64,000 bases of DNA from Phaeosaccion multiseriatum. Lineage: Eukaryota > Protista > Ochrophyta, other classes. This document shows, one piece after another, positions 6,001 through 63,400 of this stretch (position 1 is its first letter; each line of letters opens with the position of its first letter). Both the position numbers and the translations under genes were made by a program. The stretch spans positions 1,054,001 through 1,118,000 of the forward strand of contig OZ218960.1 in assembly GCA_965112735.1 (NCBI GenBank), written 5' to 3'. The notes below the pieces were generated by a model. It worked only from the letters and a program-made list of their open reading frames with translations. It was not told where the DNA came from and made no database searches.

Positions 6001-9000
6001 CCTCCACTTCATGCGCCATGTGAGTGAGGACCCGATCGTACCCAATCTCCGTCTCTGTCTCTACCATCGTCACCTCCATGTAGCCGGTAATGCCCGTCTG
6101 ACCCGATTTGACGGAGCTCCAGCTGCCCTCTGTGGCGTTGTTGAAGCCCTTGACCCTCATATAGTACGTTGAAGCTTCCTTCAACTCATCAAAGGTCACG
6201 AGAGCGTTCTCAGCGGCGTCTAATGTCGTCAAATTGCTCGTTGCGGAATCGAACTCGGCCTCGGTGGGCGCAATCTCCGCATACCATCCGTCAATGTCAC
6301 TGTCCGGGTCGTCCAACCAGGAGAGGCGAATGTAGTCCGGTTGCTCTCGCTCGATGGTGAGGCTGGTGGGCGCCAGAGGCGTCTGCCTGACCTTGAGGGA
6401 CGAGGTGGAGAAGGAGGTAAAGTTGTTCCACGAGCCTTCCGCATCTGTTTTTTAGGGAATGGGGGCGGCGGGGGGGAGAGGGTTCCGTCATTTGCCAAGA
6501 GGGGGGGGACAAAGGGGAAGGGGATGGGAAGAGGGAGGGAGGGGGGGAGGGAAGGAGGAGGGATGAGTTGTCAAATCGACCACAGCAACACACACACATA
6601 CACATACACACACACACATACACACACACACCGCACATGAGAAGACAGGGTATCGGCCACTCTTTCCTCCATTCCTCCCCTCTCTCCTCCATTATGTCGC
6701 TGCTTGCGCCTCTCTCCCTCCCTACCTCAGACACGCAACGATAGACACACACAGAAACACATGTCAAGATACGCAACCAACCAAGTGTGCTAGCTTGTGG
6801 CAGAAGCAAGCCAGAAGAGAAGCAGGCGACAAGCAAGGAAGCAAGCAAGCCAGAAGGCCAGCAAGGCAAGAAAGTATGTCAAGGAAGCAGCCCTTTGTTT
6901 CTCACGTGTGGCTGTGAGGATCGGCTGCCCCGCCGTGGTCTTGGTACCGCATTTGAAGTACACAGTCTTCTCCATCGTCCCGTCGTCGGCAAAGGGCACC
7001 GAAAGTGACGTCGAGAAACCGCTCGATGAACTCAGGCTCAGCCGACAGCTGCCGTAGCTGCTGCTGGTGGAGCTATACTCGAGGTCAATATCGAGTCCTC
7101 CGACTTGTGTCAAACCTGAAACGTTCGGATGTAACGTCAAGTCCAGTGCGTACGACATGTCTTCCACTACCTCCCTCAGTCCCGCCATCCGCCCCGTCTC
7201 AGCCATGGTGAGGTTAACATGGCCGTGTATGCCGGTACTCTGCACGTCCACGTCGCTGTAGTTCCAGTGTCCACCGATGGCAGCGCTGTGACCTGCCACT
7301 CGAGTATAGTATACCGTTGCCTCCTCAAGGTCCGTCAGTGGAAAAAAAGAGTCCGCAGAGTACTGAACCCACATATCCACTCCCTCTGTCCCACCCTCCA
7401 ACGCTGCCTCCGACTCTGCGTACTCAACGCGCCATCCATCGACACCATCAATGCCGTGGTCGACCCACTCCAGCACGATGGACTCCGGTTGGGCACTCCT
7501 GACGTCAACCCAGGGCACACCGAACACATGCCATGAGCTGCTTGCAAAGGAGGTGAAATTGTTAAAGGATCCCAGCTGCTCCACTGCCAGCAGGGACGGC
7601 TGCTCGGCGGAGGTGCAATTGTCGCAGTAGATATACGCCGTCGCATTCATCGTCCCGTCGGGAAGCACCAGGGTGTAACTGTCGCTGTACGAAGATATGT
7701 TGCCAATCTGACAGTTACCGTTGCTCCAGTCCGTGTCGATAATGCTCAGCGCGAGGTCCAAACCGCCTCTTTGCCTCAACCCGGTCGCGTTTGGCATCAG
7801 TTGGATGTCCACCTTGTGCACCAGGTGCGTGTGAAGAGCATCGTACCCCAGTTCACGAGACGTCTCTTCGAGTGTGACATTGACGTGTCCGTAGATGCCT
7901 GTGAAACCGTCAAGGTCCCCCCAGGTGCCCTCCCCTGCTGTGTTCCATCCCATGACCTTGAAGGAGTAGTCGCTGCCCTCCACCAGCTTGTGGTCGAGTA
8001 TGTCAACGAAGGTCATGTTGCTTGTGGAGTTGCCCACATTGATGTACTCCTCCTGCAATTGACAAGCCACACACAATAGAGTTGAGAGAGTTGAGAGAGT
8101 TGAACAGGAAAGGCCACAGCAGGAGCAGGGGGAGGAGCATTTGGTGATACAGGTGCCAGGTGCAACATGCGGCATCCCATTTGAAGGTGAAGGCTGGAGA
8201 CGCATTTCACGCACTCCTCTTCCACCCTCCTCTTCCTTCCTTCCTTCCTTCCTTCCTTCCTTCCTTCCTTCCTTCCTTCCTTCTTTTCCCTCCCTGCTTG
8301 TCGCCACGTACACATGCACACACAACCCTCTATCTCTCGCGCTTCCTCTCTCTCTCTGTGTATCTCCTTCTCTCTCTCCCTCTGTCCTTTGCGCTATCTC
8401 CTTTTACGCGTATGTCTGTGCGTGCCTGTGCGTGTCTGAGACTGTTTGTTTCTGTGTTTCTGTGCTTGTGTGTGTGTGTGTGTGTGTGTGTGTGTGTGTG
8501 CGTGCATGCGTTCGTGTGTTCCTGTGTGTACGTCTGTCCCTCTCTCTCTCTTTGCGCGCGCATGTCAACCCCTTTCCACCCCCCCTCCCTCCCTTCCACC
8601 CACCCACGCCTTGCTTGCTTGTCAAAGCCGCAAGACCGCAAGTTATGCCTCACTCACTTGGTCTGCCTCAACGGCCGTGGCGTCAGCGTACACAGTCCAT
8701 CCGTCCAGGTCGGTCGTGCCAGCTGCCTCCTCCCAGCTCAGCGTCAGGTACTCGGGTTGGCCCACCAGAGACAGGCTTGGCGACCGGGGCAAGTTGCGAA
8801 CGCGAAATTTCTCTGACTCCCAGTCTGTGAAAGGAGCCAAAGAGAGATGAGAGCAGAGAGAGAGACACACACGAGAGGTTCGATGAAGAGGGGCGGGGGA
8901 AGGGGAGGGAGGAGGAATGAGTGAAGAATGCCTTCCTTGACAGCAGGGAAGAGCACCACGTGATGTGCTTGGTTTCATGAAGCACTCGCAGCCGCACATC

Positions 9001-60436: not shown

Positions 60437-63400
60437 CTACTGCTGGTGGCCCACCGTTATCTTCCCTCCCGTCACATTGATACCCCCATACCGCCCTCCT
60501 CCTCCTCCTCCTCCTCCTCCTCCTCCTGTTCCCGGTGGGCCCATCACCGGCACTGCCTGCACAGGAGCTGTGCTCCCTCCTGCCCTCTCCTGTCCCCTCC
60601 TCCCCTCCAAGATACCAGCAGTGCGCACATGCATGCTCTTTCCCTCCTTGTCCTGCTGCTGCTGTTGCTGCTGTTGTATCACCAACTGGTCCTTCTGCCC
60701 ACCCCCGCGATTGCCACCGTTCCCAGGACTCGGCCCCCGATGCCCTTCCCCCTGATGCTGATGCTGCTGCTGTTGCTGCTGCTGCTGCTGCTGCTGTTCG
60801 CGCCCAACAGACGTGTGGACTCTACTAGCACCACCCAAGCTCCCCCCCGACGAGGTTTTGTACAAGCGAGAGCCCGCCGGGGCAACCTTGGCTGCGGTGA
60901 TGGGCACAAGGCGTGCATAACGCGACACCTCTCTACTCGCCACCAACCCCCCCCCGTAGCCTCCTCCTCCTCCTCCTCCTCCTCCTCCTCCTCCTCCCAT
61001 ATCATCATACCACTCGGCCTCTGTATTCTCCCCCTGCCCTCCGGCATTGCCCCGTCGACGCAGCTTGGTCGGAGAAAGCGACTGATGAAAGAGCTTTCCA
61101 CGCATGGCCTGAGCAGTCTGCATCCTTCTGTTGGTGCTACCCGCCGTCCCTCCTCCTCCTCCTCCTCCTCCTCCTCCTCCTCCTCCTCCTCCTCCTCCTC
61201 CTGCTGGTCCTCCGGGTCTCTCCGCCGCCGCCGCTGCCTCCGCCGCCGCTGCTTTGGCCGCGAGGGCATAAGCTTCCTTGGGGCCTCCTCCTCCGTGGCT
61301 ATCAGTCCTTGGTGGAGAAGGAGGGAAGCTCTCTGCTAGATTGTGACGCAAGCCCCCCCCCCCTCCTCCTCCTCCTCCTCCTCCTCCTTCCATGTCTTCA
61401 TCTGCATCGTCATAGTCGCCATCTGCAGCAGGTCCCCCACCGAGAGACATACGTAAGGGGGTCACAACCGCCTGGGTCTGTCCGGTGCCTCTTGTGCTTG
61501 AGATGGGCATCCCTCCGGAGGGCATCGGGCTCAGCATGCGGTCGCCTGCGGAGTACAGTCCATTGCCTGCACATCGAAGAGCAAGCAGTGGGTAGGTGGG
61601 TAGGTGCGTGGGTGCGTGGGTGGGTGGGTGGGTGAGTGGGTGGGTGGTGGTTAGCTGGTTGGTTGGTCGGTCTGTCTATCCGTCCGTCCGTCCGTCTGTC
61701 TGTCTGTCAGTCTGTCTGTCTGTCTGTCTGTCTGTCTGTCTGTGTGTCTGTGTGTCTGTGTGTCTGTGTGTCTGTGTATGTGTTTGTGTGTCTTTCTGAC
61801 TGCCAGTCTGTCTGTCTGTCTGGCTGGCTGGCTCGCCATCTATATATCTGTCTCTCTCCCTGTGCCCATCTGTCGATCTCTCTAGCTGTCTGTCTCTTTC
61901 TCTCTGTCCCTCTGCCTCTCTGTTTCTCTGTGTCTCTCCCTCTGCCTGCCTACCTGCCTACCTGCCTGCCTGCCCATATGCCTGCCCCATGTACGCACCC
62001 ACGCGCCTTCCTACCCATACAGTTTCCCACCCACTCTCTTCCCCTCCTCGCCCTCACTCCCTTCCCCTCACACCCCCCTCCCCCACCCTGCCCACTCACT
62101 CTCCTCCCCCCTCACTCCCTTCCTCTCACACCCTGCCTGCCCTCCCCCTTCCCTTCACTCCCTCCCCCCTCACACACCCCCCACAGCGCTCACCCCCAAT
62201 GGAAGAGGCAGGATTCCAAGTGGTCCCTCCAATCTGTGCGTCGTAGTCTGAGAGAGTGGAGAACCCCTCAGAGGAGGGGAGGGTTGCGGTCAAGCTGTGG
62301 TCCAGACCACCGCCATTGCCACTGCCTCCTCTGGAGAGGGTGGTGGCGGGTGACATCAACCGCCTGGAGGGAGATGCACCACCCGCCATGCCGGTGTTGA
62401 CTGCTTGGTGGTACGGTGTGTGGGTGTGTGGGTGTGTGGGTGTGTGGGTGGCGGTGTGGGGAGCGATGCGGTGGTGGGTGGGTGGGGGTCGGGTAGGGGG
62501 AGAGAAAGGAGAAGAGAGGAGGAGAGGAGGGAGGAGGTGGGGAGGGGAGGGGAGGGGGATGAGGAGGAGGACACAGGAGGACGGCTAACCCATACATCGG
62601 CCCATACAGCCCTACCCACCCACCCACCCACCCACCCACCCACCCTTCCTGCCTCCGTCCTTCGTGACTTACGCACACCCCCATATGCTTCTTTACTGAC
62701 TTACTCACCCCCGACTCCGAAGGGCCTGTTGCAGGAGAGGCACTTGGAGGACAAGAGCATCTTGCCATCGCCGCTGTTCATTGCTTGCATGAGGGTTTGA
62801 ATACGTGTCTGTTCCAGTTGGTAGCGAAGCTTTTGGATCTCCGCCTCTATGAGTTGTCATTTGTGAGAAGGTGGGAAGTAAGCACATGGCCATTCCGGTC
62901 TCTTCCTACCCTGGCCCTCACTCACTCACTCACACACACACACGCACGTGTACGCACTCACTCACTCACACTCACTCACTCACATACTCATACTCATTCA
63001 CTCACGCACTCACACACGCACGCACGTACGCCCTCCTTCACTCACTCACGCACGCACTCACTTATTACTCACTCACTGAATCGCGTCACCTCACTTCACT
63101 TGACTGCACTCACTCACTCACCCCTGGGCTTGCTGGTCTGCACATGCGTGGCCAGCGTGCTGATTCGCTTATGCTGGGCGGTGGCAGCTTGACCCAACCG
63201 GACCTTTTGTCGGAGGATGGCAGTGGATGGGAAGGGAGGAATGGCAGTGGATGGGAAGGGAGGGGTGTAAAGGTGTACCCCTACCGCTGTGTCACCACCT
63301 TGCTGCTTGCTACTGCTGCTGCCTCCCGCATGCCTGTGCCTGCCCCTGCCCATATGCCTGCTCCTCCTTACCTCCATCTCCTCGAGGACGTCGTCGATTT

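What the first reader, a model, noticed from the sequence alone, without database searches (positions are those of the whole stretch)
8141..60686. Hyper-abundant dispersed motif CTGTATCACCAAC / GTTGGTGATACAG in exons, introns and splice acceptors
Seen: I count 16 exact TGTATCACCAA copies on either strand (near 8141, 17280, 36000, 39537, 43445, 43475, 45005, 46393, 46563, 46663, 50539, 50554, 50569, 50584, 50665, 60675), plus variants (9051, 33047, 45715, 46799, 51121, 63287). Uniform-base expectation for one 11-mer in 64 kb is about 0.03. It usually sits in CAG/CTG runs as a frame-neutral 9-nt interruption (CAG-TTGGTGATA-CAG). In the exonuclease CDS it is translated in three frames and both orientations (QLVIQ, AVGDT, TVSPT), so it is not a protein motif. 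It supplies the acceptor AG at 17279, abuts the acceptor at 51134 and lies 14 nt before the one at 39562. Inference: a DNA-level signal or self-propagating micro-element, analogous to cyanobacterial HIP1 or bacterial DNA uptake sequences. Candidates include a protein-binding, methylation or recombination site, or a footprint left in CAG tracts.
Basis: partly seen in the sequence, partly recalled or inferred. Interest (0 to 1): 0.8.

Follow-up and report, generated by a model that had tools for sequence, protein, structure and literature searches.

The report
Dispersed 13-base core in CTG repeats
A 13-base sequence really does recur about twenty times in this 64-kb stretch of an unidentified, extremely repeat-rich eukaryote, and it most likely is a small repeat unit copied at the DNA level among CTG/CAG tracts rather than a protein motif or a bacterial-style genome signal.

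Summary
There are 16 exact TGTATCACCAA copies and 20 copies of CTGTATCACCAAC with at most one mismatch; shuffles expect 0.02 and 0.10. The shared sequence is only the 13-nt core plus an adjoining CTG tract. The upstream flanks are unrelated, there are no target-site duplications or inverted ends, and no longer repeat carries the core.

Half of the loci lie within 15 nt of CTG-like tracts that cover about 1% of the window (P<5e-5). The core always has the same orientation and phase relative to CTG, as a 9-nt in-frame block. It forms perfect tandem arrays (15 nt x4, 30 nt x2.7). Two sequence variants are each shared by two loci.

Two other complex cores, CATCCACTGCCA in (CCCT)n and CATATGGGCAGG in (GGCA)n, behave in the same way, and 35% of the window is tandem repeat.

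Best reading (about 0.5): this is a dispersed micro/minisatellite family, spread by repair-associated copying between and near CTG tracts and amplified locally by slippage. I found no support for a HIP1- or DUS-like signal.

Limits: that any copy is translated is unproven, the organism could not be identified, and genome-wide enrichment could not be tested.

The parts
8140..8152 (-). Core copy CTGTATCACCAAA (1 mismatch), followed by an imperfect CTG/CTC run
9051..9063 (+). Variant copy CTGTACCACCAAC at the 5' side of a CTG run; same T>C variant as at 45715
17279..17291 (+). Exact solo copy without CTG flanks, directly followed by (GT)19. On the - strand its CAG precedes an 87-nt open segment that ends in a GT donor
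33049..33061 (-). Degenerate copy GTATATCACCAAC (2 mismatches)
35974..36031 (+). Decayed repeat of 30-nt period holding an exact core at 35999-36011. It lies about 45 nt inside a probable intron of a - strand gene (donor GTAAGT at about 36055)
39536..39548 (+). Exact solo copy in an intron of the zuotin/ZRF1-like gene, 14 nt before the acceptor at 39562
43426..43506 (+). Perfect 30-nt minisatellite x2.7, unit (CTG)3 TTG (CTG)3 TAT CAC CAA, with cores at 43444 and 43474. It lies between two convergent genes
45004..45016 (+). Exact copy at the 5' edge of a short CTG run. Reads QLVIQ in the 801-aa - strand ORF, in the linker between the exonuclease and HTH regions
45715..45727 (+). Variant CTGTACCACCAAC between (CTG)8 and (CTG)3(TTG)n. 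Reads QLVVQ inside a long poly-Q stretch that has no counterpart in WRN exonuclease
46392..46404 (+). Exact solo copy without CTG flanks, 14 nt downstream of a likely - strand donor CAG|GTGGGG that follows the exonuclease motif ...KLERDF
46562..46574 (-). Exact copy in the opposite chromosomal orientation, still at the 5' edge of its CTG run. Reads TVSPT in an open frame
46662..46674 (+). Exact copy at the 5' edge of (CTG)7. Reads AVGDT. ATCACCA pairs with TGGTGAT on the far side of the tract
46799..46811 (-). Variant CTGTATCAACAAC; reads AVSTT in an open frame
50538..50610 (+). Tandem array of the 15-nt unit CTGTATCACCAACTG: four perfect copies plus a decayed fifth. It starts 24 nt inside an intron after a PX-like exon (donor AAG|GTAACC at 50514/50515)
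50640..50676 (+). Decayed copies in the same intron: CCGTATCCCC, CCGTATCACCGC and GTGTATCACCAAC. The CCG variant recurs at 51120
51120..51132 (+). Variant CCGTATCACCAAC between a (CCCT)n tract and the AG at 51133-51134, in front of an exon with a weak DUSP match
60674..60686 (+). Copy TTGTATCACCAAC at the 3' edge of a CTG run. 60656-60685 matches the 30-nt unit of the 43.4-kb array at 29 of 30 positions
63287..63299 (+). Degenerate copy CTGTGTCACCACC (2 mismatches), next to CTG-like sequence

Best explanation
The motif is the complex core of a dispersed micro/minisatellite family. A short DNA unit (13-nt core CTGTATCACCAAC, usually carried as CTG-TATCACCAA-CTG within 15- or 30-nt monomers) is copied from place to place at the DNA level. 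The copying happens mainly between and next to CTG/CAG trinucleotide tracts. Proposed route (inferred): during replication or break repair, a nascent strand ending in CTG repeats can anneal to another CTG tract. It copies across an embedded core and then returns (ectopic gene conversion or template switching). Short microhomology-primed copying of nearby sequence could give the solitary and the locally inverted copies. Replication slippage then amplifies the unit into tandem arrays and expands or contracts the flanking CTGs. The block is tolerated wherever CAG tracts are tolerated, because it is 9 nt long and free of stop codons in five of six frames. Its CAG end or C/T-rich body can incidentally end up as part of a splice acceptor. 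No dedicated function is needed. Shown here: common descent by copying, the link to CTG tracts, local amplification, and the absence of a longer element. Inferred: the enzymatic route and neutrality.
For: The core cannot arise repeatedly from CTG CTG CTG by point mutation, since seven changes are needed, yet 13 of 20 copies match the 13-mer exactly. So the copies share ancestry. Homology is confined to the core plus the CTG tract: the 80 nt upstream are unrelated in all pairs, and no longer repeat family carries the core. Eight of 16 loci are within 15 nt of CTG-like tracts that cover about 1% of the window, against a random mean of 0.5 (P<5e-5). Orientation and codon phase relative to CTG are the same for every tract-linked copy on either chromosomal strand. 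There are perfect tandem arrays, 15 nt x4 and 30 nt x2.7, with decayed copies beside them. Variants are shared between loci: CTGTACCACCAAC at 9051 and 45715, and CCGTATCACC at 50648 and 51120. 60656-60685 matches the 30-nt unit of the 43.4-kb array at 29 of 30 positions, and a decayed repeat of the same 30-nt period lies at 35974-36031. Copies cluster locally: 15 of 20 lie between 43.4 and 51.1 kb, and four lie in alternating orientation within 420 bp at 46.4-46.8 kb. Two further complex cores are dispersed in the same way inside other simple repeats. Tandem repeats cover 35% of the window. The motif appears in both orientations relative to transcription in about equal numbers, which argues against an RNA-level role.
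Against: Four solitary copies (17279, 39536, 46392, 51120) have no CTG flanks, and all four end at exactly the same 13 nt. Copying driven by CTG homology does not predict this; a discrete inserted unit or a selected binding site does. The shared-flank evidence is weak, because (CTG)3TTG(CTG)2 also occurs at 60764 without the core, and three-unit CTG runs are the commonest run length anyway. Only one window of one genome was available. There are no polymorphism, orthologue or expression data, and the copying route is entirely inferred.
Confidence: 0.5

Rival explanations
1. The 13-mer is a functional DNA signal: the recognition site of a sequence-specific DNA-binding, modifying or nicking protein. 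Selection or biased conversion maintains the site, and adjacent CTG tracts may be a by-product of stalling or nicking at it.
For: The conserved 13-nt boundaries are sharp and identical in four solitary copies in unrelated contexts. Sequence variation among copies is very low. From general knowledge, not tested here: the 3' half contains CAACTG/CAGTTG, which is the Myb core YAACKG and also an E-box.
Against: The motif forms tandem arrays and 15/30-nt minisatellites. It is strongly clustered rather than evenly spaced. It is not palindromic. Decayed copies exist next to perfect ones. Two other unrelated cores show the same dispersed pattern, so a dedicated signal is not required. No candidate partner protein was found.
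Confidence: 0.15
2. The motif is the remnant of a mobile element: a transposon excision footprint, a solo terminus, or the extreme 3' end of a retroelement whose tail is a CTG-type simple repeat.
For: It is a discrete unit with sharp ends. It often sits at the 5' edge of a simple repeat, as in core-(TGC)n at 46662, 45004, 46562(-) and 9051, and core-(GT)19 at 17279. In tracts it is flanked by CTG on both sides, like a 3-bp duplication.
Against: The window holds no longer element that carries it. All copies begin at the same base, instead of showing variable 5' truncation. Solitary copies have no target duplication beyond 1 nt. The core has no inverted-repeat symmetry, as a two-ended footprint would. 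No transposase or reverse transcriptase was found among the ORFs scanned.
Confidence: 0.12
3. The motif acts in splicing, as a branch-point or acceptor-proximal element or an intronic enhancer. Its spread would reflect intron biology.
For: All intronic loci with an assignable position lie within about 45 nt of a splice site. These are 39536 (-14 from the acceptor), 51120 (abuts the acceptor), 17279 (supplies a CAG), 46392 (+14 from a donor), the 50538 array (+24) and 35999 (about +45). In green algae, tandem repeats are reported to be enriched near intron-exon junctions (PMC3887541).
Against: Both orientations occur at both intron ends, so there is no single RNA sequence. Many copies lie in CTG tracts of open reading frames or between genes. 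Several splice sites are my own predictions without RNA evidence. Intron interiors here are filled with simple repeats, which leaves the ends as the main place for any complex sequence.
Confidence: 0.05
4. The motif is an assembly, base-calling or library artefact, such as an adapter or linker or a systematic miscall inside CTG repeats.
For: Many copies are identical, and many lie inside repeats that are hard to sequence.
Against: Copies also occur in unique sequence (17279, 39536, 46392). There are single-base variants and decayed copies. The blocks preserve CTG phase and open frames. The 21-mer is absent from 596 Gb of prokaryotic genomes. The 18-mer in viral contigs and the 15-mer in metagenomes give only isolated, unrelated coding hits, with none at contig ends in an adapter-like pattern.
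Confidence: 0.03

Closest known systems
Dispersed minisatellite families that share a short core (human hypervariable minisatellites with the 10-15-bp core GGGCAGGAXG, Jeffreys 1985; from my own knowledge)
   Same: A short, complex core recurs at many unlinked loci, is embedded in tandem arrays of short monomers, and has no transposon structure. One of the other families seen here (CATATGGGCAGG) even contains GGGCAGG.
   Different: Here the core is tied to a trinucleotide tract, is often solitary, keeps a fixed codon phase and lies inside genes. Recombination activity was not tested.
Interruptions of CAG/CTG repeats (CAA or CAT codons in polyglutamine genes, AGG in FMR1; from my own knowledge)
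   Same: An in-frame non-repeat block inside a CAG tract, which would be expected to damp slippage.
   Different: Known interruptions are single-codon point variants that arise at each locus separately. This is a 9-nt complex block of common origin shared by many loci.
Simple repeats invading genes in Eimeria (CAG tracts in coding sequence read as Ala, Gln or Ser, plus a second dispersed telomere-like repeat; 20-30% simple repeat in repeat-rich regions; PMC4199364)
   Same: The region is very rich in simple repeats, CAG tracts are tolerated in reading frames, and a second short motif is scattered through genes. A DNA-level role was proposed there but not shown.
   Different: No AAACCCT arrays occur here. 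The motif is a unique 13-mer inside CTG tracts, and the organism is different and unidentified.
HIP1 of cyanobacteria and DNA uptake sequences of Neisseria and Haemophilus
   Same: An exact short oligomer far above chance, present in both coding and non-coding DNA.
   Different: Those are prokaryotic and spread fairly evenly at about one per kb. HIP1 is a palindrome, and each has a known or suspected protein partner. None of these features was met or could be tested here.
Microsatellite families with shared flanks, and satellite dissemination (Lepidoptera flanking-sequence families and mini-me elements, from my own knowledge; de novo MSAT-11 satellite insertions in Chlamydomonas, PMC9940879)
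   Same: Tandem-repeat loci at different places share non-repeat sequence, implying copying between loci. The mechanism of satellite dissemination is described as generally unclear.
   Different: Those shared parts are tens to thousands of bases long and are often linked to transposons. Here the shared part is only 13 nt.

Membership tests
HIP1-type or DNA-uptake-type over-represented genome signal | Exact short oligomer far above compositional expectation | tested here: met
   16 copies against 0.02 expected, and 20 against 0.10 expected
HIP1-type or DNA-uptake-type over-represented genome signal | Spread fairly evenly along the genome, independent of local repeat context | tested here: not met
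   15 of 20 copies lie in 7.7 kb. Half of the loci adjoin CTG tracts that cover about 1% of the window. Tandem arrays are present. Only one window was examined.
HIP1-type or DNA-uptake-type over-represented genome signal | Palindromic site (HIP1), or a cognate receptor or methyltransferase | tested here: not met
   The 13-mer is not its own reverse complement (read directly from the sequence). A partner protein cannot be tested with these tools.
Dispersed minisatellite family with a shared core | Tandem arrays of short monomers (10-60 nt) containing the core | tested here: met
   15 nt x4 at 50538-50597; 30 nt x2.7 at 43426-43506; a decayed 30-nt period at 35974-36031
Dispersed minisatellite family with a shared core | The same core at several unlinked loci with unrelated flanks | tested here: met
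   About 13 separate loci; the 80 nt upstream are unrelated
Dispersed minisatellite family with a shared core | Length polymorphism or recombination activity at the loci | not testable with these tools
   Needs population or pedigree data
Transposon, MITE or excision footprint | Terminal inverted repeats, or footprint symmetry | tested here: not met
   The core has no internal inverted symmetry. Inverted partners occur only as neighbouring full copies.
Transposon, MITE or excision footprint | Target-site duplication flanking each copy | tested here: not met
   Solitary copies share at most 1-2 nt. The CTG on both sides is seen only inside CTG tracts.
Transposon, MITE or excision footprint | A longer parent element bearing the sequence at its end | tested here: inconclusive
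   None in this window; the rest of the genome was unavailable
Introner-like intron-generating element | Introns that share extended sequence similarity along their length | tested here: not met
   Introns that hold the core share only the 13 nt and simple repeats
Protein-level repeat motif | The same peptide encoded, with synonymous variation among copies | tested here: not met
   Different peptides (QLVIQ, AVGDT, TVSPT) from identical nucleotides. Several copies are in introns.

The most novel reading that the evidence does not exclude
The 13-mer is a true cis-acting site for a sequence-specific DNA-binding or nicking protein of this eukaryote. The site spreads by biased gene conversion and seeds CTG/CAG tracts, and hence polyglutamine-type stretches, next to itself. 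This would be a eukaryotic counterpart of bacterial over-represented signals and a driver of coding-repeat birth.
Probability: 0.1. Interest if true: 0.8.

Novelty: new variant of a known kind. Interest (0 to 1): 0.45.

Why it matters
If the copying interpretation holds, these loci would be a clear case of sequence exchange between dispersed trinucleotide tracts. A 9-nt tag that cannot arise twice by mutation marks which tracts have exchanged sequence. That makes a rarely documented process directly measurable in one genome: concerted evolution, or ectopic templated repair, among microsatellites, including those inside genes. It also bears on how low-complexity inserts and introns of repeat-rich protists grow. 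If instead the sharp 13-nt unit proves to be a bound site, it would be a new kind of eukaryotic genome signal.

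Tried and rejected
Organism and genome-wide test:
- Three word-index protein searches found nothing useful: the exonuclease ORF, its conserved part, and the fn3 ORF.
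- The exhaustive profile search with the 1200-aa fn3 segment gave at best 28-31% identity.
- The contigs I fetched for three of the top hits are unrelated: two carry typical bacterial gene neighbourhoods and one is a 65% GC metagenome contig.
- Exact look-ups of three window ORFs are not on record.

Public sequence scans:
- The 15-mer scan of metagenomes returned only isolated hits without CTG context. One two-copy hit, L029, is an unrelated AT-rich minisatellite.
- The 21-mer is absent from prokaryotic genomes.
- The 18-mer in viral contigs gives nine AT-rich phage coding hits.

Literature: full-text searches for the motif, its extended forms, the other two cores, the peptides and gene-specific peptides found only PCR primers or nothing.

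RNA: there are no Rfam matches and no tRNAs in the window.

Structure: single-strand DNA folding of motif-bearing tracts shows nothing general. One 7-nt inverted pair around the (CTG)7 tract at 46665-46697 gives z=-3.7, but the tandem array folds worse than shuffles.

Ideas considered and dropped:
- "CAA followed by exactly three CTG" as evidence of co-copied flanks: three-unit runs are the commonest run length anyway.
- An Eimeria-type repeat landscape: there are no AAACCCT arrays.
- A U12-type splice signal, a tRNA 3' end or primer-binding site, a relict spliced leader, and interstitial telomere repeats. These were considered from memory and dropped, either because positions and orientations do not fit or because nothing could be tested.

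Full report
OBSERVATION
One hundred dinucleotide-preserving shuffles give a mean of 0.02. CTGTATCACCAAC with at most one mismatch occurs 20 times against 0.10 expected. Allowing two mismatches adds 33049(-), 50598 and 63287. I ranked all 11-13-mers that are not low-complexity by the number of separate loci they occupy. This is the top complex word in the window.

SETTING
- The window is 52-62% G+C.
- Tandem repeats cover 35% of it, and 23% has period 6 or less. For comparison, the Chlamydomonas v6 assembly has about 1.7% microsatellite plus 5% satellite (PMC9940879).
- It is eukaryotic, with short exons and GT-AG introns made largely of simple repeats.
- Genes recognised:
  - fn3-rich ORFs on the - strand at 1.9-11.5 kb;
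  - a zuotin/ZRF1-like gene on the + strand at 38.0-42.3 kb, with DnaJ, zuotin homology and Myb/SANT domains;
  - a WRN-type 3'-5' exonuclease plus HTH gene on the - strand at 43.9-47.1 kb;
  - exons with weak PX and DUSP matches on the + strand at 50.4-51.4 kb.
- Composition, poly-Q/S/G stretches and repeat-filled introns recall volvocine green algae, where tandem repeats concentrate in introns and coding sequence (PMC3887541). That is only an inference.
- The organism's proteins are not in any searchable collection. The organism stays unidentified, and no other part of its genome could be examined.

ANATOMY OF THE COPIES
- In an anchored view the conserved unit is C-TGTATCACCAA-C.
- In most copies it reads CTG | TAT CAC CAA | CTG, in phase with CTG repeats on one or both sides. 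That is a 9-nt block replacing or interrupting three repeat units.
- Seven base changes separate TAT CAC CAA from CTG CTG CTG, so the block cannot have arisen repeatedly by mutation. The copies share ancestry.
- Eight of 16 loci lie within 15 nt of CTG-like tracts that cover about 1% of the window. Random placement gives 0.5 (P<5e-5).
- Orientation relative to the CTG run is the same for every tract-linked copy, including the three on the - strand. The + strand bias of the motif simply follows the bias of the CTG tracts, 26 versus 6.
- The core often sits at the 5' edge of the run: 46662, 45004, 46562(-) and 9051.
- Four copies have no CTG flank at all: 17279 (next to (GT)19), 39536, 46392, and 51120 (after (CCCT)n). 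All four end at the same 13 nt.
- Nothing else is shared. The 80 nt upstream are unrelated in every pair. Solitary copies have no target duplication beyond 1-2 nt. The repeat finder reports only simple repeats and no longer element.

SIGNS OF COPYING
- The unit forms perfect tandem arrays: CTGTATCACCAACTG x4 at 50538-50597, with decayed copies downstream, and a 30-nt unit (CTG)3 TTG (CTG)3 TAT CAC CAA x2.7 at 43426-43506.
- A decayed repeat of the same 30-nt period lies at 35974-36031.
- 60656-60685 matches the 30-nt unit at 29 of 30 positions. This is only suggestive, because the TTG-interrupted CTG pattern also occurs at 60764 without the core.
- Two variants are each found at two loci: CTGTACCACCAAC at 9051 and 45715, and CCGTATCACC at 50648 and 51120.
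- Copies cluster. Fifteen of 20 lie between 43.4 and 51.1 kb, and four in alternating orientation lie within 420 bp at 46.4-46.8 kb.

THE MOTIF IS NOT UNIQUE
Two other complex cores are dispersed in the same manner, each inside its own class of simple repeat.
- CATCCACTGCCA has 9 exact copies and about 21 with one mismatch at about eight loci. It is always followed by TCCCTCCC and is part of a 24-nt minisatellite within (CCCT)n.
- CATATGGGCAGG has 6 exact copies and 17 with one mismatch at about eight loci, within (GGCA/GGCAGG)n.
- Shuffles expect 0.04 and 0.00 respectively.
A general repeat-turnover process of this genome therefore explains the pattern more economically than one dedicated signal.

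EXONS, INTRONS AND SPLICE SITES
- The copy at 39536 is intronic, 14 nt before an acceptor. The zuotin-homology-domain exon that begins there confirms that acceptor (E=1.8e-13).
- The 50.5-kb array begins 24 nt inside an intron after a PX-like exon. The copy at 51120 abuts the AG in front of a DUSP-like exon.
- The copy at 35999 lies about 45 nt inside a probable - strand intron.
- The copy at 17279 supplies a CAG in front of an open 87-nt segment.
- In the exonuclease gene the readings QLVIQ and QLVVQ and AVSTT, AVGDT and TVSPT are in open frames. Alignment to the mouse and human WRN exonuclease structures qualifies this. The matching blocks are contiguous in WRN, but here they are separated by two segments of about 60 residues that hold the copies at 46799, 46662 and 46562.
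- The copy at 46392 follows a likely donor CAG|GTGGGG by 14 nt.
- So these copies lie either in low-complexity inserts or in in-frame introns, and translation is unproven.
The nucleotides are identical, including the codons TTG GTG ATA, while the peptides differ. The motif also faces both ways relative to transcription in about equal numbers, which argues against an RNA-level role.

CONTROLS AGAINST ARTEFACT OR UNIVERSAL SEQUENCE
- The 21-mer CTGTATCACCAACTGCTGCTG is absent from 596 Gb of prokaryotic genomes.
- The 18-mer occurs in nine AT-rich phage contigs, in unrelated coding context.
- The 15-mer in metagenomes gives isolated hits without CTG context.
- Within the window, variants, decayed copies, copies in unique sequence and preserved phase all argue that the sequence is real.

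MECHANISM
My best reading (about 0.5) is a dispersed micro/minisatellite family propagated by repair-associated copying.
- A nascent strand ending in CTG repeats can anneal to another CTG tract, copy across an embedded core and return. This is ectopic gene conversion or template switching.
- Microhomology-primed copying of nearby sequence would give the solitary and the locally inverted copies.
- Slippage makes the arrays and resizes the flanking CTGs.
- The block persists in reading frames because it is 9 nt long and has a stop codon in only one of six frames (TGA in GT TGG TGA).
- Shown: common descent, the link to CTG tracts, local amplification, and the absence of a parent element in the window. 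Inferred: the enzymatic route and neutrality.
- The main weakness is the four solitary copies with identical sharp limits. These fit a discrete inserted unit or a selected site better.

Rivals: a bound or modified DNA signal (0.15), a mobile-element remnant (0.12), a splicing element (0.05) and an artefact (0.03).

COMPARISON WITH WHAT IS KNOWN
- The closest known kind is a family of dispersed minisatellites that share a short core. The features tested here (tandem arrays, the same core at unlinked loci with unrelated flanks) are met; polymorphism and recombination activity could not be tested.
- It differs by being tied to a trinucleotide tract, by keeping codon phase, and by often being solitary.
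- It resembles CAG-tract interruptions in position, but not in origin.
- It resembles HIP1 or uptake sequences only in being over-represented. Even spacing and palindromy were tested and not met.
- Eimeria offers a parallel for simple repeats tolerated inside genes (PMC4199364), but its hallmark telomere-like arrays are absent here.
- No paper in the searchable library mentions this sequence other than as chance primer matches.

VERDICT
The feature is real and well above chance, and it is a DNA-level copied unit rather than a protein motif. It is most likely a new variant of a known kind, a dispersed repeat family with a complex core. Interest is moderate. It offers a natural tag for sequence exchange among dispersed trinucleotide tracts. 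The decisive genome-wide, population and expression tests could not be run here.

Noticed in passing
window 17418-17607, 19653-19755, 23229-23240, 53658-53669, 54215-54226, 57551-57701, 57932-57943, 63218-63253: A second dispersed complex core, CATCCACTGCCA (9 exact copies, about 21 with one mismatch; shuffles expect 0.04). It is always followed by TCCCTCCC and is part of a 24-nt minisatellite embedded in (CCCT)n.
   Followed up: partly
window 18684-18713, 20084-20198, 22445-22456, 41662-41689, 52143-52154, 55972-56107, 61969-61980, 63345-63356: A third dispersed complex core, CATATGGGCAGG (6 exact copies, 17 with one mismatch; shuffles expect 0.00), embedded in GGCA/GGCAGG repeats. One copy sits at the 5' end of a zuotin-gene intron. 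It contains GGGCAGG, as in the human minisatellite core.
   Followed up: partly
whole window: Tandem repeats cover 35% of the 64 kb (23% with period 6 or less). Examples are (AGT)231 at 18757-19447, (GACA)138 at 1966-2515, (CACT)110 at 23977-24415, a 58-nt x18 array at 34060-35138 and a 31-nt x19 array at 16600-17186. This is far above the Chlamydomonas figures.
   Followed up: partly
window 38000-42300 (+): A zuotin/ZRF1 (GlsA-like) gene with a J domain, a zuotin homology domain and Myb/SANT exons. It is split into about ten short exons by GT-AG introns that consist mostly of simple repeats.
   Followed up: partly
window 43888-47160 (-): A WRN-type 3'-5' exonuclease gene with a C-terminal HTH region. 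Its conserved blocks align to the WRN crystal structures, but they are separated by low-complexity segments of about 60 and 170 residues (poly-S, poly-Q, poly-G). These segments stay in frame and may be inserts or introns.
   Followed up: partly
window 1868-11483 (-): Very long fn3-repeat ORFs (1482, 511 and 457 aa). The 1482-aa ORF, the only one searched, has no relative above about 31% identity among 1.8 billion representative proteins. Two of the three top-hit contigs fetched carry typical bacterial genes.
   Followed up: partly
window 50419-51359 (+): Exons with weak PX (E=0.0017) and DUSP (E=9e-4) matches. The PX-DUSP combination is unusual and was not examined further.
   Followed up: no
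window 46665-46697 (+): ATCACCA from the core and TGGTGAT on the far side of a (CTG)7 tract form 7-nt inverted arms around the tract. The DNA fold has z=-3.7. This was seen at this one locus only.
   Followed up: partly
window 28176-28237 (+): An array with the 5-nt unit CCCTA. It is not a canonical telomere repeat, and no TTAGGG-, TTTAGGG-, TTTTAGGG- or AAACCCT-type arrays occur in the window.
   Followed up: no
whole window: No tRNA genes and no Rfam family matches in 64 kb.
   Followed up: yes
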